NCBI RefSeq assembly: GCF_902459465.1
Contig: NC_047072.1
Span: forward strand, 10,292,001-10,356,000
Origin: Asterias rubens
Lineage: Eukaryota
Direction: 5' to 3'
DNA: 64,000 nucleotides
The notes under the pieces were generated by a model, which saw only the letters and a list, made by a program, of their open reading frames with translations, ran no database searches and had not been told where the DNA came from. Positions 9,561 through 54,060 of this stretch are shown piece after piece. Every line of letters begins with the position of its first letter. The first letter of the stretch is position 1. A program made the position numbers and the translations under genes.

Positions 9561-11458
9561 ATGGAGAGTCACTTTGAAAAAAGTTCGATTCCAGTAACGA
9601 GTTATCCATCTTCACCGGAACCATCTACCGATGAAATACACCACCAACTAACAGATGAAGGGCTACACTACATGATCCAGGAGGTACAGTATTATGTCTC
9701 TGTGATTTTACAGCAGCAAAATTTGCTGCTACTGCTGCAAACATCAGCGCTAGCACATTGTAACGGAAGGGCAAGAACAGGCAAGTTCACACGAGGCAAA
9801 TTTACAGCGAACCAGTTACAGACAAGGAACCAAAAAGATTATTGAATAATAAATAATAAAATAAAAATCTTTTGGGATCGTCGTTAAGACACTGTTTAAA
9901 AAATTACTCGCACTGCAGTGACATGGGTTGCCTCCAAGAAAAGTTGCCTCATCTGACTGGGGAGAAAGCCATCGTATTCTTGAATTGAATTGAATTGTAT
10001 ATATTGAATCGTAAAGTACAAACACATTTTCACCACCTCGAAAGTACTTTTATTTTCACATCAGCAAGAGGAGCAGCTTCACCGAGAACGCCCTGCAGTG
10101 ACCATTGGCCGAACGGTGTCCACCCCGGAACGTATCTTCGCCAATCTCAACCTCTCTGGCCAACAGGGCTTCGACGAGGATGAAGACGAACCGGGTATAT
10201 CAAGGACACCAAGAACAAGTCCCAGTCGGACCTCCCCCATCTCAGCTGCCACGTCTCCGCCCACCGGGATTCACCCGTCAGAGATGAGACAGCCCTCAAC
10301 AGACAGAATGTACCAGGACATGGTCGGTGACCTGGATGTCATGATAGACATTGCGAGGAGCATGCATGAGGTGGCTCGCCACACCAAGTAAATAAAATAC
10401 CTCTGATCTATAATAAATATTTTTCTTGCTTTTCAGTCCTCAAATAAAAGCATTTTGTTGTAAGGTCCGATTCTAAAGAAAGCTCCATTGTGAATACCCC
10501 AAAAAGTCAAATACCACAAGTTCAATGGACTTGTGCTATTCACGAGATCTTTCTTATTATTGGACTTGTGGTATTCACAAAAGCTTTCTTTAGATCGGAA
10601 TTGAACCCCCCCCCCAAAAAAAAAAAAAAAAAAAAAAAAAAATGTCTTTCTACCATTAAATTTGCTAATTCAGAGGAAGGTTGTTGGTTCTAATTGTGCC
10701 TGACTGCTGATGAAGCCTTTTTAGTGTAGACTGTATAAGAGTCGTTTTCGCACATACTCGTCTTGGACAGCTGGGCCCAATTTCATAGAGCTGCTAAGCA
10801 TGAAAATTTGCCTAGCATGAAATTTCTTCCTTGATAACAACAGGATTACCAACCAAATTTCCACGTGATTGTAAAGATAAGTAACCAACACCTAATTACC
10901 AGTAACAAGCAATATGCAACCAATAGAAATTTTGTTGGTAATCCTGTTTTTATCAAGAAAGACATTTCATGCGGAGCACATTTTTCGTGCTTAGCAGCTC
11001 TATAAAATTGGGCCCTGGTGATGAGTCGGTCAGACGCTGGCGCCACCGAAATAATACATGGTGAAATAATACATAACGTAATGTCGGTCGATTATGACTT
11101 TTGATTCATAACTAATAATATTGATTGATTGTTTGCATTATTGTTTGTCCAAAGAACTTTAATCAGCACTGCCTACGAGCGCATCGACCTGAACGACCCC
11201 CGCGTCCGAAATCTGGGCATCGGCAGAGTCATGAAGGACCTACGGATGGAGAGCGCCCATGCCGTGGTGGACGGCCAGCGAGCCCAGGTACGCTACGAGA
11301 AAGTCATGACAGACGTCCGTCGGATGAAGAGGTGCTTGAGGAACCTCGGCTTCTGGCACGGGGGCGGTCACAGTGGCTCGCTCCCGGGAGAACGGCAGCC
11401 GAGCGTCACGGACTCGTGGGGTTTGCCGTACCATTCGTTTTTCTCGAACGGCTTATAG
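9561..11458 (+). CDS. Uncharacterised 3-exon protein of about 249 aa
   Basis: Exons 9561-9683 (Kozak ACAATGG, GT donor, phase 0), 10065-10387 (pyrimidine tract plus CAG, GTAAAT donor, phase 2) and 11155-11458 (stop TAG). The frame stays open across both junctions and the exons are GC-richer than the introns. No family recognised. Confidence 0.68.
10773..11015. mobile_element. Short MITE family with GGGCCCAATTT TIRs
   Basis: GGGCCCAATTTCATAGAGC ... GCTCTATAAAATTGGGCCC. Relatives at about 11480-11729, 25787-25985, 45967-46167, 54948-55142 and 58058-58253. Confidence 0.8.
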
Positions 11459-12010
11459 TAACACTAATTAGACCCATCTGGGCCCAATTTCATGGCTCTG
11501 CTTACCTCCGAATTCTGCGCTAACGATCACGATTCCCCGCTTACTTGCAAGCGCCGAATTTCTGCGCTAGCCTTGTAAGCGTAGAATGCCTAGTAACATG
11601 GAGTACGCACGCGCAGAAGCCACAATTCGCCGCTAACCCGTGAAATACGCTTGCCGTAAGCACAGGATTCCCTGCTTCCGTAAGCGCCGATTCTGTGCTT
11701 ACGGTAATCAGAGCCATGAGATTGGGCCCAGGCCTGTGGTATGCTTCGTTTTTGAAAGGGCAAGGACACCAAGGCATTTGCTCATTGGTTAAGGGCACCC
11801 TATGAGGAAATTGTAAATTTCACTGGAGTATTTTGAAGGGCACCAAGGCAATGACTAGGAGGCATAGGAGGCAATCGTCGCCGTTGCCTCCGTAATCACG
11901 CCTGCGCTATGGGCCCTAAGAGTTGTCACATGCTGACAAACTTGTTCCACTACTTTAAGGTCATGAGAGTTTGTTTTGCGTGGTTTTCAACGATTAAAGC
12001 TAATTGTGTT

Positions 12011-12408
12011 TTAAAGGTAGTGGACACTATTGGTAATTACTCAAAATAATTATTATCATGAAACCTTACTTGGTAATGAGTAATGGGGAGAGGTTGATAG
12101 TAAACAAAAACATTGTGAGAAACGGCTCCCTCTGGTGTGGCGCAGTTTTCGAGAAATAAGTAATTTCCACGAATTTGATTTCGAGACCTTAAATTTATGA
12201 GAATTTGCGGTCTCGAAATCAAGCATCTGGGCTGAAAGCACACAACTTCGTGTGACCATGGTGTTTTTTCTTTCATTATTATCTCGCAACTCCGATGACC
12301 AATATTGAGCTAAATTTTTCACAGGTTTGTTATTGTATGCATATGTTGAGATACACCAAGTGAGAAGACTTGTCTTTGACAATTACCAATAGTGTCCAGT
12401 GTCTTTAA
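12011..12408. mobile_element. Abundant TTAA-flanked MITE family (Kolobok-like)
   Basis: TIRs TTAA|AGG(C/T)AGTGGACACTATTGGTAATT ... AATTACCAATAGTGTCCA(G/C)TG(T/C)CT|TTAA. Full or partial copies at about 4233-4849, 27984-28349, 29459-29845, 33061-33447, 39700-40237, 41445-42075 and 58611-58800. TTAA plus purine-purine termini is characteristic of Kolobok. Confidence 0.8.
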
Positions 12409-13215
12409 CATGTCAATGTATTATCCGGGATAATTAATCGCTCATAGTACTTTAGTTTTTTTATAAACATTTTGTGTTTGTTTAATAATAAGCCCACCAC
12501 GCCCCAATATTTTAGTTGATGCTGGACAAGCAAGCTTGGCCGCATGCTAGCCCCGACCTTTTTGCTAAGATAATAAATAAATATTAGTCTGGCCCCTGTG
12601 AAATGACGTCAGAAGTTAAGTCTCGTTTTTTGACATGAGGGCGCACTTCCAGATTAACGGTGGTAAAAATATTAAGGAGTTGGTGCCTTCAAAGTTTGTG
12701 CACATGGACAATTTTATTGGCCAAAATTGTGAACACAGAGGATGCTGCCAAAGTTTGTTTGTACCCCATCTAACCAATACTGACAATGTTGTCTTACGAT
12801 GGATTTTGCTTTGTGCATGAAATCGAGCCATGTGGCTTATATCCATTTGTGTCTAGGCAGAAATTCAACGACCCTGTTGTTGTGTCAATGCACGAGATAT
12901 TTGACAGTACATGCAATATTGTGAAGGGGGTAGCTTCAGTGCAAGCTGATGCAAGGGATTGATTCCATCAAATGCTTTAATTTGCAGAAAACTACTCGAA
13001 ACAAAATAATTGTGAAACTTGTTGTACTTGCCATAATCACACATTGACCCTCTGAAAGGTGCTGGACTAAAGAACAAAAATTGAAATAGTTTCATTGACC
13101 CAGATTTATAAGATACTGCCATTGTTTTATTAATTCGAACCCCGGCACGCCAGTTGATCAGTCTCGCGGATGTATTATTAGCCAGGCCCCCACAAACACG
13201 GAATTGAAGAGAGCA

Positions 13216-13716
13216 GAGTTAAAACACTGACCTCCCTCAAAACCCCGTCCAAGAGGGGGCCTAGGGGACCTTCAACCAACCCCCATACTCGCACCCTTGA
13301 TGGGTAACAGCGGTGTGGAAGAATGATTGGTCTTCAGTCCCCCTGGCCAAAGAGACTAGAAGAAGATTGACCCCACGCCACGCCCAGGTCCATCTCATCC
13401 CGCATGCAGGACGGAGAACGAGGAGCAGCGAGAATCAGGAAAAAGTGATGCCGGTGTGCCCTTGATCTGCCCGGGTAGAGTGCGTCCGAGGCAGCCACCG
13501 GCGTCGGACTATACAATCCAGAGTCTATTGAACACTACACGTATTGAAATACGTCGTGCCGCACTGGTTGATGGAATACCCTGGGGGTGCTGGGAAGTCC
13601 GTCTCTGTCGGTGCATTTCTTGGGCCGTCTAGCATGGGCCCCGTGGCTCGGAGGCCCCGGCCCCATGTAGACGGCGACAGCGAGGGCGATGGTTGGTTTC
13701 TCAGTGCTATGAACTC
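13216..13716 (-). ncRNA. Putative structured ncRNA, type A copy 1 (core of 501 nt)
   Basis: GC-rich island downstream of TATATAAG (13760-13753), followed by AATAAA (13131-13126). The 5' GAGTT..CACTGA pairs with the 3' TCAGTG..AACTC, and there are several nested hairpins. Not matched to a known family by eye. Confidence 0.6.
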
Positions 13717-13752
13717 GATGAGACCCACTGACGAACAAGCCGTGTGAGAGCT

Positions 13753-13832
13753 CTTATATAGCCTTACTAGCCCGGGAAAGCAGATGACTCACGCACGTCA
13801 AAGGTCCAACCCGCTGGAGAAAAATCTAGAAT
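13753..13832 (-). promoter_or_regulatory. Pol II-type promoter of type A: TATA, AP-1, CRE half-site, HSE-like element (repeated in copies 2 and 3)
   Basis: TATATAAG 13760-13753, TGACTCA 13785-13791, ACGTCA 13795-13800 (ACATCA in copy 3), and aGAAa-aATCt-aGAAt 13818-13832 (one mismatch to the HSE consensus). Confidence 0.55.
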
Positions 13833-14533
13833 GTCTATGACACGTCAAGTATTAAAGCATGATGAAATAAAAAATTGTCAAAATTGAAACGTTGTTTTGT
13901 TCAATGTTCCAGACGTTTCCATGCTACATTCCAAGCCTACATCACCCCCCCCCCCACACCCACACACACAAAACAATAAATAACGAAAAGCAATGAACCT
14001 TGAAAATCAGGGCTGTGTCCTTCGGTTTTTATTGTCCCATTTTCCAAATTGAAATGAATTTTATTTTCGCATTATTCGAAATTTTGTTATACGTGTAAAA
14101 TTAAGCTTATGATAACAATGGACAGAACGGAAAGGAAATGACACAATCAAAACAACACCAAGCACTTTCAACAGAAAGCGGTAAAGTCATTGATTGGGCC
14201 TAATTTTGGTTTGAGTGTTTTCAGCGCTTCTGCATGAGTCCCCATTACTTATCGTAGTTTTTAGAATGTGCTATGTGCATGAAGAAGAAAACCTGAACAA
14301 AATACATGACGCTTTTAATAATATCTCGCAACTTCGACGACCATGAGCTCAATTTTTCACATGTTTGTTATTTTATGCATATGTTGAGATACACCAAGTG
14401 AGAAGACTGGTCTTTGACAATTACCAATAGTGTCCACTGCCTTTAACACATTTTTTTCGCAGTGAGACTGAGAACAATAAAAAACCAAAGACCCGTGGAT
14501 TTGCTTTTGCCGCGAACCATCAAACCATTTTAA

Positions 14534-14893
14534 TTAAAGGGACACACCGGCTTCGTTGGGCTATTTAGGCTACAAAATACACTAAAACATGATTCTAAAG
14601 GTCTTCCAGGAATGGAGAAGAATAGTTGCTAAAGAAACCATCAAATTTGGCCGTTTTTAACGCATTTTCAAAAAAAGAAGGTCACGTGGATTATCCGAAC
14701 CACTTTTTTGGTTCGGATAACCCACGTGACCTTCGGAGATAGTTTTACTTCCAGCCGTATAAAAATAAATTAAAAATATATTACTAAACCAAATTTTCTA
14801 ATTTTTGGTTACAAGAACCATCTATAAAAACATTATTTTTATGATTCTACACCCCTAAATTGCGTAAAACTGTGAGCCGGTGTGTCCCTTTAA
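14534..14893. mobile_element. TTAA-flanked MITE inside each triplicated unit
   Basis: TTAA|AGGGACACACCGGCT ... AGCCGGTGTGTCCCT|TTAA. Copies at about 17187-17543 and 20604-20967. Confidence 0.85.
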
Positions 14894-15824
14894 GTTCAGT
14901 TCAATATAAATTGTACAAACTACTACAAGGTTCATGATTTTGCTCGTGCTGTGAAAATAACGTGGGACATTCCTATAACTTCGGCTTGAATGCAATTTAC
15001 TTAAATTGTGTAATGTTTTTATTTTATTTTAAATGTGACCCATGTGTCACAGTGGGCTCCTCAGAGTTAACTCCAAATTGCACGCTCGGTATGTAAATAC
15101 TTTGATTCGCTAGTATAGGTAAGAAAATCTCCCTTAAAAAATGCATGAATGAGCTTGGAACATAAATTCTTGATAGGCCTTTATATACTTTACAAAACCA
15201 GGCAATAGGCTTATACATCATGTAAACCATGAATGGATGAAAAAGCCTCCCATGGTACGTGTGAACAGAAGCTTGAGTTACAAGTTTCCGGCACACTCAC
15301 GGCTGTTTCCTGTTTCACCAAGGTCAACAGCAGTGTGAATCCATACCATGCGCGACAAACTGACAAAAATGCCAGAGCCTACTAATAATACGCCATGTTG
15401 TCTTACGATGGATTTTGCTTTGTGCATGAAATCGAGCCATGTGGCTTATATCCATTTGTGTCTAGGCAGAAATTCAACGACCCTGTTGTTGTGTCAATGC
15501 ACGAGATATTTGACAGTACATGCAATATTGTGAAGGGGGTAGCTTCAGTGCAAGCTGATGCAAGGGATTGATTCCATCCAATGCTTTAATTTGCAGAATA
15601 CTACTCAAAACAAAATAATTGTGAAACTTGTTGTACTTGCCATAATCACACATTTACCCTCTGAAAGGTGCTGGACTAAAGAACACAAATTGAAATAGTT
15701 TCATTGAACCAGATGTATAAGATACTGCCATTGTTTTATTAATTCGAACCCCGGCATGCCAGTTGATCAGTCTCGCGGATGTATTATTAGCCAGGCCCCC
15801 ACAAACACGGAATTGAAGAGAGCA

Positions 15825-16325
15825 GAGTTAAAACACTGACCTCCCTCCAAACCCCGTCCAAGAGGGGGCCTAGGGGACCTTCAACCAACCCCCATACTCG
15901 CACCCTTGATGGGTAACAGCGGTGTGGAAGAATGATTGGTCTTCAGTCCCCCTGGCCAAAGAGACTAGAAGAAGATTGACCCCACGCCACGACCAGGTCC
16001 ATCTCATCCCGCATGCAGGACGGAGAACGAGGAGCAGCGAGAATCAGGAAAAAGTGATGCCGGTGTGCCCTTGATCTGCCCGGGTAGAGTGCGTCCGAGG
16101 CAGCCACCGGCGTCGGACTATACAATCCAGAGTCTATTGAACACTACACGTATTGAAATACGTCGTGCCGCACTGGTTGATGGAATACCCTGGGGGTGCT
16201 GGGAAGTCCGTCTCTGTCGGTGCATTTCTTGGGCCGTCTAGCATGGGCCCCGTGGCTCGGAGGCCCCGGCCCCATGTAGACGGCGACAGCGAGGGCGATG
16301 GTTGGTTTCTCAGTGCTATGAACTC
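15825..16325 (-). ncRNA. Putative structured ncRNA, type A copy 2
   Basis: Near-identical to copy 1. TATA 16369-16362, AATAAA 15740-15735. Confidence 0.6.
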
Positions 16326-19241
16326 GATGTGACCCACTGACGAACAAGCCGTGTGAGAGCTCTTATATAGCCTTACTAGCCGGCCGGGAAAGCAGATGAC
16401 TCACGCACGTCAAAGGTCCAACCCGCTGGAGAAAAATCTAGAATGTCTATGACACGTCAAGTATTAAAGCATGATGAAATAAAAAAAAAATCAAAATTGA
16501 AACGTTGACGTTCTGAATTTTGGTTTTGTTCAGTGTTCCAGACGTTTCCATGCTACATTCCAAGCCTACATCACACCCCCCCCCCCCCCCCCAACACACA
16601 CAAAACAATAAATAACGAAAAGCAATGAACCTTGAAAATCACTGAGTCATACTGTTTCCAGGGCTGTGTCCTTCGGTTTTTATTGTCCCATTTTCCAAAT
16701 TGAAATGAATGAAAATTTTTATTTTCGCATTATTCGAAATTTTGTTATACGTGTAAAATTAAGCTTATGATAATAATGGAAAGTAAACGGAAAGGAAATG
16801 ACACAATCAAAACAACACCAAGCACTTTCAACAGAAAGCGGTAAAGTCACTGATTAGGCCTAATTTTGGTTTGAGTGTTTTCAGCGCTTCTGCATGGGTC
16901 CCCATTACTTATCGTAGTTTTTAGAATGTGCTATGTGCATGAAGAAGAAAACCTGAACAAAATACATGACGCTTTTAATAATATCTCGCAACTTCGACGA
17001 CCATGAGCTCAAATTTTCACATGTTTGTTATTATTTTTATGCATAATGTTGAGATACACCAAGTGAGAAGACTGGTCTTTGACAATTACCAATAGTGTCC
17101 ACTGCCTTTAACACATTTAATTCGCAGTGAGACTGAAAACAAAGACCCGTGGGTTTGCTTTTGCCGCAAACCATCAAACCATTTTAATTAAAGGGACACA
17201 CCGGCTTCGTTGGGCTATTTAGGCTACAAAATACACTAAAACATGATTCTAAAGGTCTTCCAGGAATGGAGAAGAATAGTTGCTAAAGAAACCATCAATT
17301 TGGCCGTTTTAACGCATTTTCAAAAAAAGAAGGTCACGTGGGTTATCCGAACCACTTTTTTGGTTCGGATAACCCACGTGACCTTCGGAGATAGTTTTAG
17401 TTCCAGCCGTATACAAATAAATTAAAAATATATTACTAAACCAAATTTTCTAATTTTTGGTTACAACAACCATCTATAAAAACATTATTTTTATGATTCT
17501 ACACCCCTAAATTGCGTAAACTGTGAGCCGGTGTGTCCCTTTAAGTTCAGTTCAATATAAATTGTACAAACTACTACAAGGTTCATGATTTTGCTCGTGC
17601 TGTGAAAATAACGTGGGACATTCCTATAACTTCGGCTTGAATGCAATTTACTTAAATTGTTTAATGTTTTTATTTTATTTTAAAAATGTGACCCATGTGT
17701 CACATGGGGGCTCCTCAGAGTTAACTCCAAATTGCACGCTCGGTATGTAAATACTTTGATTTGCTAGTATAGGTAAGAAAATCTCCCTAAAAACAATGCA
17801 TGAATGAGCTTGGAACATAAATTCTCGATAGGACTTTATATACTTGACAAAACCAGGCAATAGGCTTATACATCATGTAAACCATGAATGGATGAAAAAG
17901 CCTCCCATGGTACGTGTGAACAGAAGCTTGAGTTACAAGTTTCCGGCACACTCACGGCTGTTTCCTGTTTCACCAAGGTCAACAGCAGTGTGAAGCCATA
18001 CCATGCGCGACAAACTGACAAAAATGCCAGAGTCGACTAATACGCCATTTCAAAACAGATTATTCGTCAACATTGTACACCAGTGGTGTTTTGTGAGCTG
18101 TTCAGCACGTATTATCCGTATTCGATACCAATTTTCAATTACATTTTCGTCCTTTCGAGGTATTCGGAGTGAGAGTCAACTCCTGCTGCATTACGACGAT
18201 ATTTCATCATGGGGATGCATACTTTGCGAGCAAGATTAACATTCAGATTGTTTCTGTTTCGAGAAAATTCTACCAGATTAAAGGCACGTAAATTTTGTTT
18301 AGTTCATTTTCTGGTTCGAGAAATTCTACAATTTCACAGCACGTCACATTAGTTTGTAAGCGGTGCCGAAACTACAACCCTTTCCTTAAAATAATGCCCT
18401 ATCAAGGGTGCACATTGTTTTGGTAGATGGCACTTTTGGCCAATGAAAACTGTAGTTTCCCTTTGCATTTCTCTTAAAGGAGCTAATTTCCAACGGGTCA
18501 TGTTCAATAAGGTAATCGGACACAAGTTAAAACAAGTAGGCCTACATGCAGGCCAGGTCTGCCGGAGATTATGTTCCCCATTAGGAAAATACTTGGGCTT
18601 TAGGTAAGGAGGATGTTTCAAAAGAGGGCGCTATCAGAAGAAGTTTGTACACAGTTCGCCGTATGGGGGACAGTAAATCAGAAGGCTCAGGGGGGGGGGG
18701 GGGGGGGGGGGGCAAAATCTCATACCCACCACACCGGGCTTTACCCGACTGCCAAAATGGTATCGATCAAAGTTTTGCTGTTATTTCGAGGTAATCTAAC
18801 CAATACTGACAATGTTGTCTTACGATGGATTTTGCTTTGTGCATGAAATCGAGCCATGTGGCTTATATCCATTTGTGTCTAGGCAGAAATTCAACGACCC
18901 TGATGTTGTGTCAATGCACGAGATATTTGACAGTACATGCAATATTGTGAAGGGGGTAGCTTCAGTGCAAGCTGATGCAAGGGATTGATTCCATCCAATG
19001 CTTTAATTTGCAGAATACTACTCAAAACAAAATAATTGTGAAACTTGTTGTACTTGCCATAATCACACATTGACCCTCTGAAAGGTGCTGGACTAAAGAA
19101 CACAAATTGAAATAGTTTCATTGAACCAGATGTATAAGATACTGCCATTGTTTTATTAATTCGAACACCGGCATGCCAGTTGATCAGTCTCGCGGATGTA
19201 TTATTAGCCAGGCCCCCACAAACACGGAATTGAAGAGAGCA

Positions 19242-19742
19242 GAGTTAAAACACTGACCTCCCTCCAAACCCCGTCCAAGAGGGGGCCTAGGGGACCTTCA
19301 ACCAACCCCCATACTCGCACCCTTGATGGGTAACAGCGGTGTGGAAGAATGATTGGTCTTCAGTCCCCCTGGCCAAAGAGACTAGAAGAAGATTGACCCC
19401 ACGCCACGACCAGGTCCATCTCATCCCGCATGCAGGACGGAGAACGAGGAGCAGCGAGAATCAGGAAAAAGTGATGCCGGTGTGCCCTTGATCTGCCCGG
19501 GTAGAGTGCGTCCGAGGCAGCCACCGGCGTCGGACTATACAATCCAGAGTCTATTGAACACTACACGTATTGAAATACGTCGTGCCGCACCGGTTGATGG
19601 AATACCCTGGGGGTGCTGGGAAGTCCGTCTCTGTCGGTGCATTTCTTGGGCCGTCTAGCATGGGCCCCGTGGCTCGGAGGCCCCGGCCCCATGTAGACGG
19701 CGACAGCGAGGGCGATGGTTGGTTTCTCAGTGCTGTGAACTC
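19242..19742 (-). ncRNA. Putative structured ncRNA, type A copy 3
   Basis: Near-identical to copies 1 and 2. TATA 19786-19779, AATAAA 19157-19152. Confidence 0.6.
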
Positions 19743-22700
19743 GATGTGACCCACTGACGAACAAGCCGTGTGAGAGCTCTTATATAGCCTTACTAGCCGG
19801 CCGGGAAAGCATATGACTCACGCACATCAAAGGTCCAACCCGCTGGAGAAAAATCTAGAATGTCTATGACACGTCAAGTATTAAAGCATGATGAAATAAA
19901 AAAAAAAAAAAAATTGAAACGTTGATGTTCTGAATTTTGGTTTTGTTCAATGTTCCAGACGTTTCCATGCTACATTCCAAGCCTACATCACACCCCCCCC
20001 CCCACACACACAAAACAATAAATAACGAAAAGCAATGAACCTTGAAAATCACTGAGTCATACTGTTTCCAGGGCTGTGTCCTTCGGTTTTTATTGTCCCA
20101 TTTTCCAAATTGAAATGAATGAAAAATTTTATTTTCGCATTATTCGAAATTTTGTTATACGTGTAAAATTAAGCTTATGATAATAATGGAAAGTAAACGG
20201 AAAGGAAATGACACAATCAAAACAACACCAAGCACTTTCAACAGAAAGCGGTAAAGTCACTGATTAGGCCTAATTTTGGTTTGAGTGTTTTCAGCGCTTC
20301 TGCATGGGTCCCCATTACTTATCGTAGTTTTTAGAATGTGCTATGTGCATGAAGAAGAAAACCTGAACAAAATACATGATGCTTTTAATAATATCTCGCA
20401 ACTTCGACGACCATGAGCTCAAATTTTCACATGTTTGTTATTTTATGCATATGTTGAGATACACCAAGTGAGAAGACTGGTCTTTGACAATTACCAATAG
20501 TGTCCACTGCCTTTAACACATTTTTTTTCGCAGTGAGACTGAGAACAATAAAAAACCAAAGACCCGTGGATTTGCTTTTGCCGCGAACCATCAAACCATT
20601 TTAATTAAAGGGACACACCGGCTTCGTTGGGCTATTTAGGTTAAACAATACACTAAAACATGGTTCTAAAGGTCTTCCAGGAATGGAGAAGAATAGTTGC
20701 TAAAAGAAACCACCAAATTTGGCCGTTTTAACGCATTTTCAAAAAAAGAAGGTCACGTGGGTTATCCGAACCACTTTTTTGGTTCGGATAACCCACGTGA
20801 CCTTCGGAGATAGTTTTACTTCCAGCCGTATAAAAATAAATTAAAAAAATATTACTAAACCAAATTTTCTAATTTTTGGTTACAACAACCATCTATAAAA
20901 ATTAATATTATTTTTATGATTCTACACCCCTAAATTGCGTAAACTGTGAGCCGGTGTGTCCCTTTAAGTTCAGTTCAATATAAATTGTACAAACTACTAC
21001 AAGGTTCATGATTTTGCTCGTGCTGTGAAAATAACGTGGGACATTCCTATAACTTCGGCTTGAATGCAATTTACTTAAATTGTTTAATGTTTTTATTTTA
21101 TTTTAAAAATGTGACCCATGTGTCACATGGGGGCTCCTCAGAGTTAACTCCAAATTGCACGCTCGGTATGTAAATACTTTGATTCGCTAGTATAGGTAAG
21201 AAAATCTCCCTAAAAAAAATGCATGAATGAGCTTGGAACATAAATTCTTGATAGGCCTTTATATACTTTACAAAACCAGGCAATAGGCCTCCCATGGTGT
21301 GAACAGAAGCTTGAGTTACAAGTTTCCGGCACACTCACGGTTGTTTCCTGTTTCACCAAGGTCAACAGCAGTGTGAATCCATATACTGTACCATGCGCGA
21401 CAAACTGACAAAAATGCCAGAGTCGACTAATACGCCATTTCAAAACCGATTATTCGTCAACATTGTACACCAGTGGTGTTTTGTGAGCGGTTCGGCACGT
21501 ATTATTCGTATTCGATACCAATTTTCAATTACATTTTCGTCCTTTCGAGGTATTCGGAGTGAGAGTCAACTCCTGCTGCATTACGACGATGTTTCATCAT
21601 GGGGATGCATACTTTGCGAGCAAGATTAACATTCAGATTGTTTCTGTTTCGAGAAAATTCTACCAGATTAAAGGCACGTCAATTTTGTTTAGTTCATTTT
21701 CTGGTTCGAGAAAATTATACAATTTCACAGCACGTCACATTAGTTTGTAAGCTGTGCCGAAACTACAACCCTTTCCTTAAAATAATGCCCTATCAAGGGT
21801 GCACATTTTTTTGGTAGATGGCACTTTTGGCAAATGAAAACTGTAGTTTCCTTTTGCATTTCTCTTAAAGGAGCTAATTTCCAACGGGTCATGTTAAATA
21901 AGGTAATCTGACACAAGTTAAAACAAGTAGGCCTACATGCAGGCCAGGTCTGCCGGAGATTATGTTCCCCATTAGGAAAATACTTGGGCTTTAGGTAAGG
22001 AGGATGTTTCAAAAGAGGGCGCTATCAGAAGAAGTTTGTACACAGTTCGCCGTATGGGGGACAGTAAATCAGAAGGCTCAGGGGGGGGGGGGGGGGGGGG
22101 GGCAAAATCTCATACCCACCACACCGGGCTTTACCCGACTGCCAAAATGGTATCGATCAAAGTTTTGCTGTTATTTCTATTCGCTTATATATATAAGCGT
22201 GCAGGGGCCAATTTCATAGAGCTGCTTTAGCAAAGAATTTGTCTAAGCACGAAAACAGCTCGCTTATTCTACACATGTTATTGGCCAAAATTGTATGCTA
22301 TATATATAGCATGAGTCTGATATAGGGGGAGGGCACCAGAATCTCCTGCCACACCGGAGCTGCACCATGTTCTTGGAAAAAAAAAATCGATCCAACCCCA
22401 AACCTGTAGATAATGTAAAACATGCAACAAGAGAAATTGTTACGTTTTACATTGCTATTTTGTTGCTATTATAAAGTTACTGTTGTTTGCTTTTGGTATT
22501 GGAAAGGCAGAGCCGAGACTGGGATCATTCTTAGATGTAATTTTATGACGTGCACGTAGAAGCGTTACTTTCCAAATCAAAGTAAAGATCAATTTCGCAA
22601 TTTTCATGAAAATTAGGAAAATATGTTTCATTATTTTTGTTTTGTTATGAAAATATGCGTATAGTCCAGGACTCGTGTCTGATGTCAGTTTCGTTTTAAA

Positions 22701-22859
22701 TTGACAGAAATTGACTCTGAATTAATTGTTAACTTAAAAAAAAAACAAGTAAAACATATAATAGGCCTAGCATTCGATTCAATATATTTATATTTTAGTG
22801 TATAAGGAAATGGTCTAAGTGAGGCAGCCCGGCGATTGCACAACCAGTAGTAACCAATA

Positions 22860-23147
22860 AGTGCATATATACGTCATGACGCGTCAGCTTATCCTCCTAC
22901 CACAGATAGCTTGCACACTCAGCAATTCCATTGCCAAACGTAGTCTTTGTGCGGGCGTTAAAAAATGACCCACGGTCCTCTAACACTAACAAAACATTCA
23001 TAATACACGACTGACAACACGACGTGAGACTACAAGTACATGACGTCACCCTTTCTGCATAGATACGACATCAAACAATAGACTGTTTACATGCGTAAAA
23101 ATAGACTCGTTACGTGGGTGTTTTTCAGGAGGAGGCGCCTATATAAA
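22860..23147 (+). promoter_or_regulatory. Promoter of type B with TATA box and clustered CRE/bZIP sites
   Basis: TATATAAA 23140-23147, perfect CRE TGACGTCA 23041-23048, ACGTCATGACGCGTCA near 22871-22886, TTACGT near 23110, and CCAAT near 22854. Confidence 0.6.
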
Positions 23148-23162
23148 CCCCTGCCACACTGA

Positions 23163-23510
23163 GCAGAGTTAGGTTTTCTCAGCGGTGCGTTGAAATGCGT
23201 AACAATGGGGACTCCTCACTTCGTCTACATCGCAACCTACATCCCAAGCGACGACGTATGGAAATAATACTTCGCTCCGGGGCTGCTTTTGAGTAGCCCC
23301 ATTGCTCGCCATCTTGATGGCAAACCTTAAGGACAGACTCGGCCCGGGCTCGGCAACCTCCCATAGACGGCCGCGCAGTCACCCTTTAAGGGTGCTAGCG
23401 GTGGGAGGGCGTCGGGGATACCCCGGCCCCACTTGTACAGTCTCTGGTGCGCTTTTGTTGTGCGTTCTGACTTAAGGCGTACTTCATTTAAATATTCGCA
23501 CCGATTCTGT
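23163..23510 (+). ncRNA. Putative structured ncRNA, type B (diverged paralog of type A, core of 348 nt)
   Basis: End pairing GCAGAGT/ATTCTGT and CGGTGCG/CGCACCG. Stems GGGGCT/AGCCCC, GCCAT/ATGGC, CCTTAAG/CTTAAGG, CCTCCCA/TGGGAGG, CACCCT/AGGGTG and GTCGGGG/CCCCGGC. Four motifs are shared with type A. Confidence 0.6.
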
Positions 23511-24189
23511 ATTTGCGGGGGAAAACACAATCATCTGCATCCAGCAAGTCAGCATGTCTTCTGTCGTCACTTCCACGGCAAGGCCAGATAAAATAAAAAC
23601 TTGAAGCTTTATACATGTATGTATTTTTTATTTCTGACGTAAAAAAGGGAATGTTTTAAGGATCTCAGATGAAGAAAAAAAAGAACAGCCGGTTCTCTTT
23701 TTAAATATGTCGGGCGGCCATTTTGGGAAACAAATTAGAGAAAAAAGGCCGCCCTCCCCTTTTTCCAAAAAGCAGGACACTAGATAATTATGTTTTGGGG
23801 CCAACCTGCACGTTATAAAAGGTTTTATTTTTTTTCCCCTGTAAGATGAGACTAAGAGGAGCCACAAGGCTCATCGAGTCCCGATTTCACGAAGAGCTAT
23901 GATAATGGAATGATTTGTGTATCTTTATGCAATCAATTGATTGGAAAAGAGAGTTTTTGGTTATTGAAGAACAATCTCCAGTCACAGTATATGTACAAAA
24001 TACTTATATGCCAGAAGACAAGATCATTATGTAAAATATCCTGAGAGTTTTATTAATACAGTATTGAGTATTCTACAATAAAATTTGACTCGGTCAAATA
24101 AAAAGGATACATGACACTGACAGCACGAAAAATATGAATACTCGTCAAAAAGTGGAAACTGCCAAGTTTGTACCCCCCCCCAACCCATT

Positions 24190-25200
24190 TTATTTCGTCA
24201 GGAACTGCATTACCATGTGTACGCAGACGACACTCAGCTATACATCACGTTTAAATCTTCTCAAGAAAACGCCAATGCATCTATTGCAAGACTTGAGAAA
24301 TGCATCCAAGAGATTCGACGTTGGACACAACAAAACTTCCTGAAGTTAAATGATGATAAGACAGAGTTCCTTCTATTTGGGTCACGTCAACAGTTAACTA
24401 AGGTTTCAGTGCCATACATCTCCATCGGTGATGCTCGGATAGCTCCCTCGCTGAAAGCTCGGAACTTAGGGGTTATTTTTGATTCATCAATGACACTTCA
24501 GCCACACATCAACAACATTGTTCGTTTATCATCATATCACATCAGGAATATAGGTAAGATTCGCAAGTACTTGGACAAAAGTGCCACTGAAAAGGTCATT
24601 CACGCATTTGTTACTTCTCGTCTTGACAACGGCAATGCTCTTCTCTACAGTCTTCCTAACAACCAGATTTCCAGACTTCAACGGCTCCAAAATACTGCTG
24701 CCCGCATTGTGACACTGTCTAGAAAATCGTGTTCTATCACCCCCATTCTGAAACAACTACACTGGCTCCCTATCTCTCAACGAATCATCTTCAAGCTGAT
24801 GCTCATTGTCCACAAAGCTCTTAATGGCAAGGCTCCCCACTATATTTCTGAACTGCTTCAAGTTTACACTCCATCAAGGAATCTTCGATCAAGTTCTATG
24901 CTTCTCCTCATTGAACCCAAGTCTCGACACTCATGGGGTGACAGGTCTTTTTCTTCAGCCGCGCCACGCATCTGGAACTCTCTACCACTTAATCTTCGAT
25001 CTTGTCTTTGTACTGCAAAATTCAAGTCTCTTCTCAAAACTTATCTTATGTCACAGGTTTTCAATGACTAATTTTGTTGTGTCTGTTTTTTCTTTGTGTT
25101 GTGTATTGTTTTTGTTTTGTTTTTGGTTTTACTGCGCCTTGAACACCCAGCAGGGTGGATATGTGCGCATTACAAGTCTTATTATTATTATTATTATTAT
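24190..25200 (+). mobile_element. 5'-truncated L2/CR1-group non-LTR retrotransposon (RT C-terminus plus 3' tail)
   Basis: ORF 24217-25071 has YADDTQLY, KLNDDKTE, RNLGVIFD, LQRLQNTAARIV, LHWLP and RIWNSLP, all typical of L2/CR1-group ORF2. It ends in a (TAT)n tail at 25181-25200. Confidence 0.93.
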
Positions 25201-27322: not shown

Positions 27323-30300
27323 TCAATATGTAAAGAGTTGCTTGAGAGTATCCAGAGTAAGTGCACCAGTCTCTCCTTCCAGGTTGTCTAGGCTGGCACT
27401 AAAAGGGTCAGAAACCATTTGAAAAAAATGTTTATTTTTTATATATTTTTTAAAATTATATTCTTACAGATAAACATTTTTATGGTAATGAAATTTCAGA
27501 AGAAAATATCTGTAATTATTATTTACTTTATCATTTTGAAGGTTGAATATTGGTGATGACATTTAAAGGAGGTAATATTAATTTAAACTTTGGATAAAAA
27601 ACATGCTACACTAATATGGGACAGCAACTAATATTCAAATAAATTTGAATACAAGTATTTCATAGCAAATTAGTTATGAATTAATGACTACAATACAGAG
27701 AAAATTATATCATTTCATCGAAAGAACACAAATAAAAGACCACATCAATTTGTCTTTGTTATTATACAAAGCAGTACATAACTTGTAAACTCAACACAAT
27801 GACATGGGGACTACATTGCATTTGTGTTCCATATCTATTCATAAAGGCACTTGCCCCGATGCCCCTGTTCATTACCTTCGTGCCCCTAGAAATGCTACAC
27901 AAATGGAGGGAAACAATTATTAAACATTTGATCTCATCAAAAACAGCCAAAGCCATTCAACACTGAAACCCAGCCAACCAAAGTTAAAGGCACTGGACAC
28001 TATTGGTAATTACTAAAAATAGTTACGAGCAAAGAAAACCTTACTTGGTAACAAGCAACGGGGAGCTGTAAAACGTTGTGAGAAACAGCTCCCTCTGAGG
28101 TAATGTAGTTTTTGAGAAAGGTGTAACTTCTCACTCAAATGTTAAAAGACTTCAGGTCTTTTTTAGGCATCTGAAAGCACACAAATGTGTGCAACAGTTT
28201 TGTTTTTTCTTTCATTACTCTCTTGCAACTTCGATGATCAATTGCGTCCCAAATTTTCACAGATTTGTTATTTTATGCATTGATACGCTGGGATACACCA
28301 AGTGAGAATGCTGGTCTTTGACAATTACCAAAGGTGTGCAGTGCCTTCAGACTCACAATGATAACCAATAAATATAATGACAGATAAACTGAAGATGAAA
28401 CTATAACAGTCGCAGCATAAAAACATTTCAATAAATTAGAAACGTCTCTCTCCCTCTCTATTGACTTACCTTGTGTGCTTAGCTTGTAGAAACGCATGTA
28501 ACCGTTCCTCTATAGTGTCTCTTACTAGAAAGCGATGAACTACAGTTGGCCTAAACGAATCAATAAAACAAAATACTGGGTGATCAACTTTGATGTTGGT
28601 TTAGTGACAGGTTGCAAACTATATTACACTCGTCAACTATTTAACATGATATATTTACACATAGATTCTTGTCAGTTGATTGGTGGAAAACATATCATAT
28701 GTCAAGCTTTATTTAGGCATGCATTTACTGCCGCGACGCTCCAAACTTCCTTTTGGGCGTCCTATACTGATAAATATAGGACAATTGGGACACTTCACAG
28801 CGAAGCTACATATTTATATGCAGCATTGTTATTAACTTCAATACCGTGGAGTTTCTTAATTGGTCTCAACGTTTCGACTAGCTTGCTCTCACTCACTCAC
28901 TCACCCACTCGGTCACCCACTAGCTTGATTTATAACACACCTGTTGCTTTTTCTGAATTCTGGTTGGATGAACTAATATAGTCTAGTGATGGCGCGATCA
29001 TGTTTTGCGGAAACTCGTTACAGCGCCCTCTTTTGACTTGAACCGTGAACAGCAACTAAAAAACTTCCTTTCTTTTCCAGATTTCTGTTCTTATTTCACA
29101 TTTAAGACCGAGCTGTGTTATAAAACATGTTATGTATAGTAGTCATCCTCAGAAGACTGAAGAGTGTGAGAGATGTGGGCCTATTTATAGGGGTTCAGAG
29201 TTTTCATAAATGTTTGTCTCACCTCGTTTGGCCGATACGATGAACTCTCCCCACAGCTTGTAACTCACTGGCTGGATTGAGAATAGGCTCAACGAGTAGT
29301 ACATGAGTAGCTTCCATGATATTCAGACCCTTGCTTCCGCTGTGTACGGGCATCAGGAGTGCCGTCACACACTCCTCTTGCTTGAAATCCATCAAGTTTT
29401 CCTAGGAAGGAAACAAATTTTCTACACTTGAATTTGCATGTTCACGGCACATCAAATATTAAAGGCAGTGGACACTATTGGTAGTTACTCAAAATAATTA
29501 TTAGCATAAAACCTTTCTTGGTGACGAGTAATGGGGAGAGGTTGATAGTATAAAACATTGTGAGAAACGGCTCCCTATGAAGTGCCATAGTTTTCGAGAA
29601 AGAAGTAATTTTCCATGAATTTGATTTCGAGACCTCAGATTTAGAAATTGAGGTCTCGAAATCAACCATCTAAACGCATACAACTTCATGTGACAAGGTA
29701 GTTTTTTCCTTTCAATATTACCTCGCAAGGTCGAAGACCATTTGAGCTCAAATTTTCACAGGTTGGTTATTTTGTGCATATGTTGAGATACACCAACTGT
29801 GAAGGCTAGTCTTTGACAATTACCAATAGTGTCCACTGCCTTTAATAGAGGGAAATTTGCATGAGAGATTAAGAATATTATTTTCGTTTTTTTTTTACCC
29901 ATATACACCGATGTGTGTTAACACTGTCTACTCAGTACTTTCCTGAGCTCTGTGAACAAAAATCATAGGTATATAACTCGGTTGGGATTCAAACCCACAA
30001 CCTTTGCAATTCTGGAGCAGTGTCTTACTAACTAGACCACCGAGATTGCCTGGCAGCTAGAGGCAGTTCAAATCCTACATGTGTTTACTTTAGCAGCGGG
30101 TACCGCAAAGATTTAACAGATGGAAATTTATTGTAATTATTATACATTTCTGGTAATGAAACCAAGCAGTGTGTGGTATCACCATGTGTGTTTCTACTTG
30201 CCACGTAGATTGTGTTCCTTTTGAAAACTCGTCTTGACCCATTTCACCTGACGTCATCATCAGAAAAATCTTGAATGCGCCATACTGGTGGGCAATTTCA

Positions 30301-52821: not shown

Positions 52822-54060
52822 GAGGAGCACCAGTCTAAACAGTCGTCTGTTTCAACAATTTGAATAGACGGCTGTTTTATGAACCAATTCGTAGTGAGGA
52901 GAGCACCACTTTAAAAAGTCGTCTGTTTCATTGAACGGCTGTTTTGTGTATCATTATTTTGTCTATTCTGTAAGTGAGGAGCACCACTTTAAACAGTCGT
53001 CTGTTTCTTAGAACGGCTGTTTTGTGTATCATTATATACTTCTCAATTCTTAGTGTGGAACACCACTTTAAACAGTCGTCTGTTTCATTGAACGGTTGTT
53101 TTATGTACCATTAAATACTTGACAATTCTTAGTGAGGAGTACCACTTTAAACAGTCGTCTGTTTCATTATACGGCTGTTTTGTGTATCATTCTCAATTCT
53201 TAGTGATGAGCACCACTTTAAACAGTCGTCTGTTTTATTAAACGGCTGTTTTATGTATCATTATATACTTCTCAATTCTTAGTGATGAGCACCACTTTAA
53301 ACAGTCGTCTGTTTCATTTAACGGCTGTTTTGTGTATCATTATATACTTCTCAATTCTTAGCGCGGATATCCAGTTTAAACAGTCGTCTGTTTCATTGAA
53401 CGGTTGTTTTATGTATCATTATATACTTCTCAATTCTTCGTGATGAGCACCACTTTAAACAGCCGTCTGTTTCTAAAAACGGCTGTTTTATGTATCATTA
53501 TATACTTTTCAATTCTTAGCATGGAGCACCAGTTTAAACAGTCGTCTGTTTTATTATACGGCTGTTTTGTGTATTATTATATATTTCTCAATTCTTCGTG
53601 ATGAGCACCACTTTAAACAGCCGTCTGTTTCTAAAAACGACTATTTTATGTATCGTTAGATACTTTTCAATTCTTAGCATGGAGCACCAGTTTAAACAGT
53701 CGTCTGTTTCATTAAACGGCTGTTTTGTGTTTCATTATGTACTTCTCAATTCTTAGTGCGGAGCACCACTTTAAACAGTCGTCTGTTTCATTGAACGGTT
53801 GTTTTGTGTATCATTATATACTTCTCAATTCTTAGAATGGAGCACCAGTTTGAACAGTCGTCTGTTTCATCGAACGGCTGTTGTCTGATCATTATATACT
53901 TCTCAATTCCTAGTGAGGAGCACCACATTTAACAGTCGTCGGTTTTCATTGAACGGCTGTTTTATGTATCATTATATACTTGTCAATTCTTAGCATGGAG
54001 CATCACTATAAACAGACATCTGTTTCATTGTGTATGGACATTTATCGACAGCTGTTTTGT
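52822..54060. repeat. 79-bp tandem satellite, about 15-16 copies, each with an internal inverted repeat
   Basis: GAGCACCAC..AAACAGTCGTCTGTTT unit starts at 52979, 53058, 53137, 53208, 53287, 53366, 53445, 53524, 53603, 53682, 53761, 53840, 53919 and 53998. Confidence 0.95.

What the first reader, a model, noticed from the sequence alone, without database searches (positions are those of the whole stretch)
13216..23510. Types A and B form one RNA family with four collinear conserved blocks: candidate novel ncRNA system
Seen in the same 5'-to-3' order in both: (1) CGTCTACAT; (2) ACGACGTAT-loop-AATAC hairpin; (3) CCGG(T)GGCTGC; (4) A GTTACCCATCAAGGGTGCGAG (13308-13288) versus B GTCACCCTTTAAGGGTGCTAG (23378-23398). 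Block 4 is 17/21 identical, with two changes in the loop and a C:G to U:G change in the stem. It is enclosed by homologous helices (A CTTCCA/TGGGGG, B CCTCCCA/TGGGAGG). Both types also contain TAGACGGCC and a closing helix of different sequence. Conserved motifs and topology with divergent spacers are the pattern expected of an RNP-forming or catalytic RNA (inference). The locus has four copies, with A3 and B head-to-head.
Basis: partly seen in the sequence, partly recalled or inferred. Interest (0 to 1): 0.88.

Follow-up and report, generated by a model that had tools for sequence, protein, structure and literature searches.

The report
Conserved starfish hairpin RNA gene, triplicated
Type A is a non-coding RNA gene of the starfish Asterias rubens, copied three times in tandem and kept by selection in one other genome, with three stable hairpins at its core; its claimed kinship with the neighbouring type B unit is only weakly supported.

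Summary
The window is Asterias rubens chromosome LR699102.1. All four blocks and TAGACGGCC exist exactly where stated, but they are statistically marginal. Three shared 9-mers occur in about 2-3% of shuffles or unrelated real windows. The reverse complement of B chains as well as B itself. Whole-length alignment is no better than shuffles. TAGACGGCC is not collinear.

One outside homolog of type A was found, the GenBank contig JACSEG010023350.1. Identity rises from about 50-68% in the flank to 84-96% in the RNA body and 98-100% in a roughly 150-nt core. Indels break every reading frame, so A is non-coding and under selection. Block 1 and TAGACGGCC are not conserved there; blocks 3 and 4 are.

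The 3' half of A forms three consecutive hairpins that are stable mainly on the minus strand. The homolog's changes preserve them.

B is a separate TATA/CRE unit with an 88-nt hairpin. That hairpin resembles A's invariant 91-nt hairpin (p about 0.001; 0.02 with block 4 held fixed), which is suggestive rather than proof.

No Rfam family, telomerase template or ribozyme matches. The three A copies come from a recent segmental triplication. An annotated plus-strand gene ends in an exon antisense to A1.

Verdict: a real lineage-specific non-coding RNA gene, possibly a hairpin or small-RNA precursor. The "one RNA family" claim is unproven.

The parts
12768..22178 (.). Tandem array of three units (2609, 3417 and about 3390 bp), each carrying one type A gene. 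Unit 1 lacks a 770-bp segment that units 2 and 3 have.
   Evidence: the repeat finder families D2-D13; unit-to-unit identity 95-97%.
13736..13900 (-). Type A1 promoter-like region. TATATAAG at 13760-13753, AP-1-like TGAGTCA at 13791-13785, CRE-like TGACGTG at 13800-13794 and TGACGTGTCA at 13847-13838, heat-shock-element-like TTCTAGATTTTTC at 13831-13819.
   Evidence: Read from the sequence. The TATA box and the AP-1-like, distal CRE-like and heat-shock-like motifs are invariant in homolog L002; the proximal CRE-like TGACGTG differs at one base there and in copy A3. The spacers between the motifs carry indels. Function is inferred.
13141..13735 (-). Type A1 conserved non-coding RNA body, about 595 nt. 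The start is inferred from the TATA box. AATAAA lies at 13131-13126, just past the conserved part. A T5 run lies at 13446-13442.
   Evidence: 91% identity to L002 with several indels not divisible by 3. The ATG of the only sense ORF is lost in L002. No protein hit.
13624..13675 (-). Block 1/TAGACGGCC hairpin of A (GCCGUCUACAUGGG...CCCAUGcUAGACGGC).
   Evidence: Folds at -37.3 kcal/mol. L002 differs at 11 positions and still folds at -36.7 in a shifted register. 99/1000 random mutants were as stable, which is not significant.
13365..13439 (-). Hairpin H1, 75 nt.
   Evidence: -33.5 kcal/mol, z -2.9 on the minus strand; -15.7, z +0.5 on the plus strand. L002's 7 changes give -36.0. Only 4-6/1000 random mutants were as stable on the minus strand, against 594/1000 on the plus strand.
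13258..13348 (-). Hairpin H2, 91 nt. Its apex is block 4 (13308-13288). It is the most conserved element.
   Evidence: -46.3 kcal/mol, z -4.6; the MFE structure is 35% of the ensemble. It is identical in A1-A3. L002 differs only at the 1-nt bulge.
13180..13266 (-). Hairpin H3, about 87 nt. It shares the GGCC base with H2.
   Evidence: -44.1 kcal/mol, z -4.6; -32.8 on the plus strand. L002 folds at -48.5, z -5.9. L002's changes are a 2-nt deletion in the apical loop, a C-G to U.G change in the small apical helix and a U.G to C-G change in the main stem. Weak Rfam mir-2012 match: 19.6 bits against a gathering score of 90.
15750..16347 (-). Type A2 RNA body (H2 at 15957-15867).
   Evidence: 99.1% identical to A1.
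19167..19764 (-). Type A3 RNA body (H2 at 19374-19284).
   Evidence: 98.5% identical to A1.
23041..23146 (+). Type B promoter-like region. Perfect CRE TGACGTCA at 23041-23048, TTACGTGG near -50, CTATATAA at 23139-23146.
   Evidence: Read from the sequence. Alignment with the A promoter is not significant (z 1.4).
23165..23600 (+). Type B unit. 5' hairpin at 23165-23222, blocks 1-3 at 23222-23287, 88-nt hairpin at 23341-23428, 3' hairpin at 23434-23512, AATAAA at 23592-23597.
   Evidence: MFE z -2.8 for 23165-23510. The 5' and 3' hairpins are strand-specific: -18.9 against -6.8, and -25.5 against -15.1. No Rfam match. No homolog found.
23341..23428 (+). B hairpin, 88 nt. Its apex is block 4 (23378-23398). 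It is the only part of B with measurable likeness to A (to H2).
   Evidence: -50.2 kcal/mol, z -2.8. Needleman-Wunsch against H2 beat all but 5/5000 structure-preserving shuffles, or 109/5000 with block 4 fixed. CM R1 scored it 24.2 bits over its full length.
13311..13465 (+). Annotated last coding exon of LOC117296691, antisense inside A1. Its 3' splice site AG at 13309-13310 abuts block 4.
   Evidence: tblastn of P0005 places exons at 9561-9683, 10023-10388, 11153-11425 and 13310-13462. The peptide is not kept in length or frame in L002.

Best explanation
Type A is a lineage-specific non-coding RNA gene of Asterias rubens, read from the minus strand.

Inferred steps. A TATA box with AP-1-like, CRE-like and heat-shock-like sites drives a transcript of about 0.6 kb, probably made by RNA polymerase II and ending near the AATAAA at 13131-13126.

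Shown from sequence and one cross-species comparison. The working part is the 3' half, which folds into three consecutive hairpins of 75-91 nt rich in G.U pairs (H1, H2, H3). H2 is essentially invariant.

Inferred function. The hairpins most likely serve as a processing or protein-binding platform. My best guesses are a cluster of small-RNA (miRNA-like) precursors at about 30%, and a protein scaffold at about 25%.

The three copies arose by a recent tandem triplication of a 2.6-3.4 kb segment, not by transposition. Type B is a second, independently promoted multi-hairpin unit. Its 88-nt hairpin may be an old paralog of H2 (about 35%). The rest of the A/B resemblance is at chance level.
For: - Outside homolog L002 shows graded identity: about 50-68% in the upstream flank, 88% across the promoter motifs, 84-96% in the body, 98-100% in the core and 86-92% in the tail.
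- The sequence is non-coding. The ATG is lost, several indels are not divisible by 3, and no protein homologs were found.
- Structure is strand-specific. The 3' half folds at -128.8 kcal/mol on the minus strand against -90.7 on the plus strand. H1 folds at -33.5 (z -2.9) against -15.7 (z +0.5).
- Evolution preserves the structure. For H1, 4-6/1000 random mutants are as stable as L002 on the sense strand, against 594/1000 on the antisense strand. In the 260-nt 3' half, 9 of 14 changed positions are unpaired where 34% is expected. In H2 and H3 the two paired changes keep pairing.
- Hairpin z-scores are -4.6, -4.6 and -2.9.
- The array is one repeated segment, and the repeated unit includes its AT-rich spacers and transposon remnants.
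- A Gnomon gene model places an exon here, which implies that RNA-seq reads cover the region (the implication is inferred).
Against: - There is only one outside homolog, from an unidentified organism.
- RNAalifold finds 1 compensatory pair, 8 one-sided changes and 11 broken pairs over the whole RNA. Classical covariation is therefore absent.
- The whole-RNA MFE z-score is only -1.8.
- The 5' half folds slightly better on the plus strand.
- No expression data were available and the transcript ends are inferred. The minus-strand AATAAA is not conserved in L002, while a plus-strand AATAAA near 13866 is.
- The only annotated transcript here runs on the opposite strand.
- Against the miRNA reading: terminal loops are only 4-8 nt, H2 carries a 5-nt bulge, H1's arms vary, and A and B share the apex rather than an arm.
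Confidence: 0.55

Rival explanations
1. A and B are two members of one structured RNA family with four collinear conserved blocks and a shared topology. They would act as an RNP-forming or catalytic RNA.
For: - All blocks exist.
- The two roughly 90-nt hairpins are alike beyond structure-preserving shuffles: 5/5000, or 109/5000 with block 4 fixed.
- CM R1 aligns B over the full length of the model.
- The TATA-to-block-1 distance is 88 nt in A and 83 nt in B. The 115 nt after the TATA box align with z 2.1, p 0.03.
- Both units have TATA and CRE-type promoters and several strand-specific hairpins.
Against: - Block statistics are marginal and were chosen after looking at the data.
- The reverse-complement control does as well.
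- Whole-length alignment gives z below 0.7.
- TAGACGGCC is not collinear.
- Block 1 and TAGACGGCC vary within type A itself.
- CM R1 scores unrelated palindromes at 23-26 bits.
- No ribozyme or RNP family matches in Rfam.
Confidence: 0.25
2. The conservation belongs to the plus strand. Type A would then be the terminal exon and 3' UTR of LOC117296691. The ultra-conserved core would straddle a regulated 3' splice site (AG at 13309-13310), and the 'promoter' motifs would be 3' UTR sequence next to a plus-strand poly(A) signal.
For: - The annotated CDS ends in 13311-13465 on the plus strand.
- The invariant core is centred on that splice site.
- The plus-strand AATAAA near 13866 is conserved in L002 and sits at the edge of the conserved block.
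- H2 also folds on the plus strand (-40.3 kcal/mol, z -3.5).
Against: - The exon's peptide changes frame and length in L002.
- About 170 nt of supposed intron are 86-100% conserved.
- H1 and H3 lose 11-18 kcal/mol on the plus strand, and H1's substitutions preserve structure only on the minus strand.
- A perfect TATA box with AP-1, CRE and heat-shock-like sites at promoter spacing is conserved.
- B has the same layout without any such gene.
Confidence: 0.15
3. A (and B) are pieces of a repeat or transposable element, such as a solo LTR or a non-autonomous element carrying its own promoter.
For: - The unit is compact, about 0.75-1 kb, with a TATA box and a poly(A) signal.
- It is multi-copy in the window.
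- It lies in repeat-rich DNA next to a LINE fragment and MITEs.
Against: - The three copies sit inside one triplicated segment and do not bound it.
- Divergence from L002 is graded rather than uniform, and homology fades gradually into the flank.
- No other copy occurs in the 64 kb.
- No TE protein or TE-type RNA match was found.
Confidence: 0.07

Closest known systems
Polycistronic pri-miRNA genes (RNA polymerase II transcripts carrying several roughly 60-90-nt hairpins)
   Same: - A TATA-type promoter and a poly(A) signal around a non-coding RNA of about 0.6 kb.
- Three consecutive hairpins with stems of about 30-33 bp.
- Conservation peaks on the hairpins.
- In H3 the main arms are kept while the apical loop and its small helix change.
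- A weak mir-2012 hit lies on H3.
   Different: - No Rfam miRNA family reaches threshold (19.6 bits against 90).
- Terminal loops are small.
- H2 carries a 5-nt bulge and a 3x3 internal loop.
- H1's arms vary between species.
- A and B share the hairpin apex, not a mature-arm or seed region.
- No small-RNA data were available.
Lineage-specific structured long non-coding RNAs driven by stress-type promoters (such as hsr-omega or satellite III transcripts). This comparison is from general knowledge.
   Same: Non-coding, locally repeated, and with a promoter carrying heat-shock-like, AP-1 and CRE motifs.
   Different: There is no sequence relation. Inducibility is untested. Type A is much shorter and dominated by three discrete hairpins.
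Type-3 RNA polymerase III small RNA genes (7SK, RNase MRP, RNase P, U6)
   Same: - A TATA box about 25-30 nt upstream of the inferred start.
- A T5 run at +290 in A (T4 in L002) and a T4 run at +291 in B.
- A hairpin lies just before A's T run.
   Different: - No Rfam match even at E up to 10 on a 700-nt search.
- The most conserved part of A lies downstream of the T run.
- No CR-I/CR-V, GAUC or other family motifs.

Membership tests
miRNA precursor cluster | Hairpins of about 60-90 nt with stems of about 30-35 bp and an MFE well below shuffles | tested here: met
   H1 -33.5 kcal/mol (z -2.9), H2 -46.3 (z -4.6), H3 -44.1 (z -4.6).
miRNA precursor cluster | Arms more conserved than the loop between species | tested here: inconclusive
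   H3 largely fits: its main arms are kept and the changes cluster at the apex. H2 is invariant throughout. H1 has changes in both arms. Only one other species was available.
miRNA precursor cluster | Match to a described miRNA family | tested here: not met
   The best match is mir-2012 at 19.6 bits, E 0.53, against a gathering score of 90.
miRNA precursor cluster | Discrete 21-23-nt reads from both arms with 2-nt overhangs | not testable with these tools
   No small-RNA data were available.
Pol III type-3 RNAs (7SK, RNase MRP/P, U6) | Covariance-model match to the family | tested here: not met
   No hit at the gathering score or at E up to 10.
Pol III type-3 RNAs (7SK, RNase MRP/P, U6) | The functional RNA ends at the first T run after a TATA-type promoter | tested here: inconclusive
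   A has T5 at 13446-13442, which is T4 in L002. The invariant hairpins lie beyond it.
Telomerase RNA | A template complementary to the (TTAGGG)n repeat | tested here: not met
   No 7-mer of (CCCTAA)n occurs on either strand of A or B.
Self-cleaving ribozymes (hammerhead, HDV-like, twister and others) | Match to the family's covariance model | tested here: not met
   No Rfam hit. Pseudoknotted HDV-like folds may escape cmscan.
Transposable element (SINE, LTR or MITE) | Sharp ends, uniform divergence between copies, unrelated flanks | tested here: not met
   Identity is graded from 50-68% to 100%, with homology fading into the flank. The copies are internal to one triplicated segment.
Transposable element (SINE, LTR or MITE) | Many dispersed copies with target-site duplications | not testable with these tools
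   The whole A. rubens genome could not be searched. No further copy occurs in the 64-kb window.
   p is about 0.02-0.24 depending on the measure. The reverse-complement control does as well. The hairpin alone reaches p 0.001, or 0.02 with block 4 fixed.
   In L002, block 1 and TAGACGGCC are changed, block 2 differs at 2 positions, and blocks 3 and 4 are kept. No B ortholog was available.

The most novel reading that the evidence does not exclude
A and B are the founding members of an asteroid-specific structured RNA family. The family would be defined by a roughly 90-nt hairpin that is closed by GGCC(N)GGG...CCC(N)GGCC and capped by a GUYACCC-loop-GGGUGC stem-loop. That cap would be recognised by a dedicated protein, with the rest of each RNA free to diverge.
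Probability: 0.2. Interest if true: 0.6.

Novelty: new member of a known kind. Interest (0 to 1): 0.4.

Why it matters
Echinoderm non-coding RNAs are poorly catalogued. Type A is a compact RNA gene with its own promoter. It carries an essentially invariant 91-nt hairpin inside a near-invariant core of about 150 nt, and it was triplicated recently. It matches none of the 4227 Rfam families.

If it is a small-RNA precursor or a protein scaffold, it adds a lineage-specific regulator that is easy to test, because the promoter, strand and hairpins are now defined.

The case also shows two annotation hazards. A protein-coding gene model is probably borrowing antisense non-coding RNA sequence as its last exon. 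Metagenome gene callers also turned host non-coding DNA into a 181-aa 'protein' by reading TGA as Trp.

The broader claim of a new RNA family uniting A and B would be more interesting, but present evidence does not carry it.

Tried and rejected
- **Rfam.** Searched at gathering score and at E up to 10, on the 11-kb region and on A and B alone. Nothing matched except a weak mir-2012 hit and an irrelevant 21-nt viral pseudoknot.
- **tRNA or tmRNA.** None in A or B.
- **Coding potential.** There is no A/B similarity in any frame. Sense and antisense ORFs have no homologs. The 45-aa ORF over the core keeps its frame in L002, but in B the same frame carries stops.
- **Telomerase RNA.** No template.
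- **H/ACA, C/D, Sm-site, SECIS and k-turn readings.** Rejected by eye: there are no H or ACA boxes at the right places, the U run GUUUUGA is not conserved, and B has no AUGA/GA core.
- **LTR model of the array.** Rejected because the A copies are internal to the units.
- **The LINE reverse-transcriptase tail at 24217-25071.** It is an unrelated, 5'-truncated insertion.
- **Metagenome hits L001, L003 and L004.** These are chance 21-mers with no further likeness.
- **Two viral-contig scans.** Empty.
- **P0003 from ENA contigs.** It looked like a new homolog, but it is the A2/A3 antisense frame read with TGA as Trp.
- **Paper searches.** Searches for the JACSEG accession, its assembly and A. rubens ncRNA or miRNA gave nothing usable.

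Full report
**Where the window comes from.** The window is identical to Asterias rubens chromosome LR699102.1 (GCA_902459465.3) from record position 10,292,001. Locus L006 positions 441-23905 match window 1-23465 at 100%.

Genes around the finding:
- An MFI_C-domain gene on the minus strand lies to the left.
- LOC117296691 lies on the plus strand, with exons at 9561-9683, 10023-10388, 11153-11425 and 13310-13462.
- A 5'-truncated LINE reverse-transcriptase tail lies at 24217-25071.
- An SNF2/SHPRH-type helicase-C exon lies at 29219-29395 on the minus strand.

**Checking the observation.** Three type A copies, 98-99% identical, lie on the minus strand. B lies on the plus strand.

The copies are not independent insertions. 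They sit inside a three-unit tandem array, 12768-22178, with units of 2609, 3417 and about 3390 bp. The units are 95-97% identical and include their AT-rich spacers and transposon remnants.

**Is the A/B likeness more than chance?** The results are mixed and mostly weak:
- Shared 9-mers: 3 observed against 0.6 expected. This was reached in 19/1000 dinucleotide shuffles and in 2-3% of 1050 unrelated real windows.
- Collinear chains: p about 0.05 at k=8 and 0.24 at k=7. The reverse complement of B chains as well or better.
- Local and global alignments: z of -0.1 to 0.7.
- blastn: only block 4.
- TAGACGGCC is not collinear in the two types.
- The 115 nt after the TATA box align slightly better than shuffles (z 2.1, p 0.03). 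The TATA-to-block-1 distance is 88 against 83 nt. The promoters do not align significantly.

The one part that stands out is the hairpin around block 4. A's H2 (13348-13258, 91 nt) and B's hairpin (23341-23428, 88 nt) have the same length class. Both are closed by GGCC(N)GGG...CCC(N)GGCC, and both have the same apex. Their global alignment beats structure-preserving shuffles: 5/5000, or 109/5000 when block 4 is held fixed.

A covariance model of H2 aligns B over its full length at 24.2 bits. It gives 23-26 bits to unrelated perfect palindromes in the array, however, and 22 bits to A's own antisense strand. The kinship is therefore suggestive and limited to one hairpin.

**An outside homolog of type A.** A scan of metagenome contigs with a degenerate block-4 pattern gave four hits, about the number expected by chance. 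Three are chance matches. The fourth, L002 (JACSEG010023350.1, 1460 bp, GCA_014845345.1, organism not identified), aligns with A over about 1 kb.

Identity is graded along the alignment:

| Region | Identity to L002 |
|---|---|
| Far upstream flank | about 50-68% |
| Block with CRE-like and heat-shock-like motifs | 88% |
| TATA box and start | 88% |
| RNA body | 84-96% |
| Core of about 150 nt (13370-13220) | 98-100% |
| Tail | 86-92% |
| Beyond about 13141 | none |

This gradient is the mark of selection on a gene, not of neutrally decaying repeat copies.

Several indels are not divisible by 3, and the ATG of the only sense ORF is lost, so A is non-coding. Block 1 and TAGACGGCC are changed in L002. 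Block 2 differs at two bases. Blocks 3 and 4 are intact.

**Anatomy and strand.** The promoter-like region upstream of the minus-strand start carries:
- TATATAAG (13760-13753)
- TGAGTCA (13791-13785)
- TGACGTG (13800-13794)
- TGACGTGTCA (13847-13838)
- TTCTAGATTTTTC (13831-13819)

The TATA box and the AP-1-like, distal CRE-like and heat-shock-like motifs are invariant in L002. The proximal TGACGTG differs at one base there and in copy A3. The spacers between the motifs carry indels. That these act as a promoter is inferred.

The 3' half of the RNA forms three consecutive hairpins:

| Hairpin | Coordinates | Minus strand (kcal/mol, z) | Plus strand (kcal/mol) |
|---|---|---|---|
| H1 | 13439-13365 | -33.5, z -2.9 | -15.7 (z +0.5) |
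| H2 | 13348-13258 | -46.3, z -4.6 | -40.3 |
| H3 | 13266-13180 | -44.1, z -4.6 | -32.8 |

For the whole 3' half the energies are -128.8 on the minus strand and -90.7 on the plus strand.

L002's seven changes in H1 raise its stability to -36.0. Only 4-6 of 1000 mutants with the same changes placed at random do as well on the minus strand, against 594/1000 on the plus strand.

Over the 260-nt 3' half, 9 of 14 changed positions are unpaired where 34% is expected. In H2 and H3 the two paired changes keep pairing.

Classical covariation is nevertheless nearly absent: 1 compensatory pair in 185. The whole-RNA z-score is only -1.8. With one homolog this cannot be improved.

**Type B.** B has a perfect CRE (23041-23048), a TATA box (23139-23146) and an AATAAA (23592-23597). 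It also has strand-specific 5' and 3' hairpins in addition to the 88-nt hairpin. No homolog could be retrieved, so its conservation is unknown.

**What it is not.**
- No Rfam family matches.
- No telomerase template is present.
- A and B show no protein similarity in any frame.
- No ribozyme model matches.

The closest known kind is a multi-hairpin RNA polymerase II transcript such as a pri-miRNA cluster. The weak mir-2012 hit on H3 (19.6 bits against 90) is not membership. Small loops, large bulges and the variable arms of H1 all speak against canonical miRNAs.

**The main rival.** The annotated last exon of LOC117296691 lies antisense in A1, and its 3' splice site touches block 4. A plus-strand AATAAA is conserved at the far edge of the conserved block.

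That could explain the conservation from the other strand. It does not explain three things: the strand-specific hairpins, the structure-preserving changes in H1, and the frame-shifting of the exon's peptide in L002.

More likely, the gene model absorbed reads from the non-coding RNA, or the two transcripts overlap.

**Verdict.** Type A is a genuine, selected, structured non-coding gene (confidence about 0.55-0.65), recently triplicated. The A/B 'family' rests on one hairpin (about 0.25-0.35).

Noticed in passing
window 13311-13465 (+); also 15919-16071 and 19336-19488: The NCBI model LOC117296691 ('uncharacterized protein', 288 aa) takes its last 50 residues from the antisense strand of type A1. 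The same ORF exists in A2 and A3. The peptide is not conserved in frame or length in the outside homolog, so this exon is probably not truly coding.
   Followed up: partly
ENA contigs of ERZ23498370 and ERZ23498428 (protein P0003): Metagenome assemblies carry A. rubens type A DNA. A 181-aa 'protein' was called on its antisense strand by reading TGA as Trp: each window TGA inside the frame appears as W. This is host DNA in metagenomes producing spurious proteins.
   Followed up: partly
window 14680-14731, 17332-17383, 20751-20802: Each array unit holds a perfect inverted repeat of about 23-25 bp (AAGGTCACGTGGGTTATCCGAACCA...), probably a MITE. It draws weak plant-miRNA Rfam hits (about 33 bits, far below gathering scores) and scores like B with the H2 covariance model.
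   Followed up: partly
window 18043-18811 and 21389-22178: Units 2 and 3 of the array carry a segment of about 770 bp, including a G run of more than 20, that is missing from unit 1.
   Followed up: no
window 13831-13819 (-): A heat-shock-element-like TTCTAGATTTTTC (one mismatch to TTCnnGAAnnTTC) lies in the type A promoter region and is invariant in L002. It may mean stress inducibility.
   Followed up: no
window 2953-3025 (-), 29974-30046 (-), 31296-31387 (-): Two tRNA-like sequences (Rfam tRNA, 38 and 37 bits) have mispaired acceptor stems and are likely tRNA-derived SINE heads. ARAGORN also calls a 92-nt tRNA-Ser(CGA).
   Followed up: no
window 24217-25071 (+): A 5'-truncated LINE: the C-terminal part of a reverse transcriptase (YADDTQLY..., weak RVT_1 match) lies about 0.6 kb downstream of B. 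It is unrelated to B.
   Followed up: partly
window 52877-54037 and 37083-37602: A 79-bp tandem array of about 11 or more units, and a 260-bp tandem duplication at 99% identity.
   Followed up: no
window 46528-48228 (-): An intronless 566-aa ATG ORF with no Pfam match.
   Followed up: no
window 12010-12415: A MITE-like element has terminal inverted repeats (GGTAGTGGACACTATTGGTAATTAC ... GACAATTACCAATAGTGTCCAG). One terminal repeat recurs in each array unit, for example near 14420.
   Followed up: no
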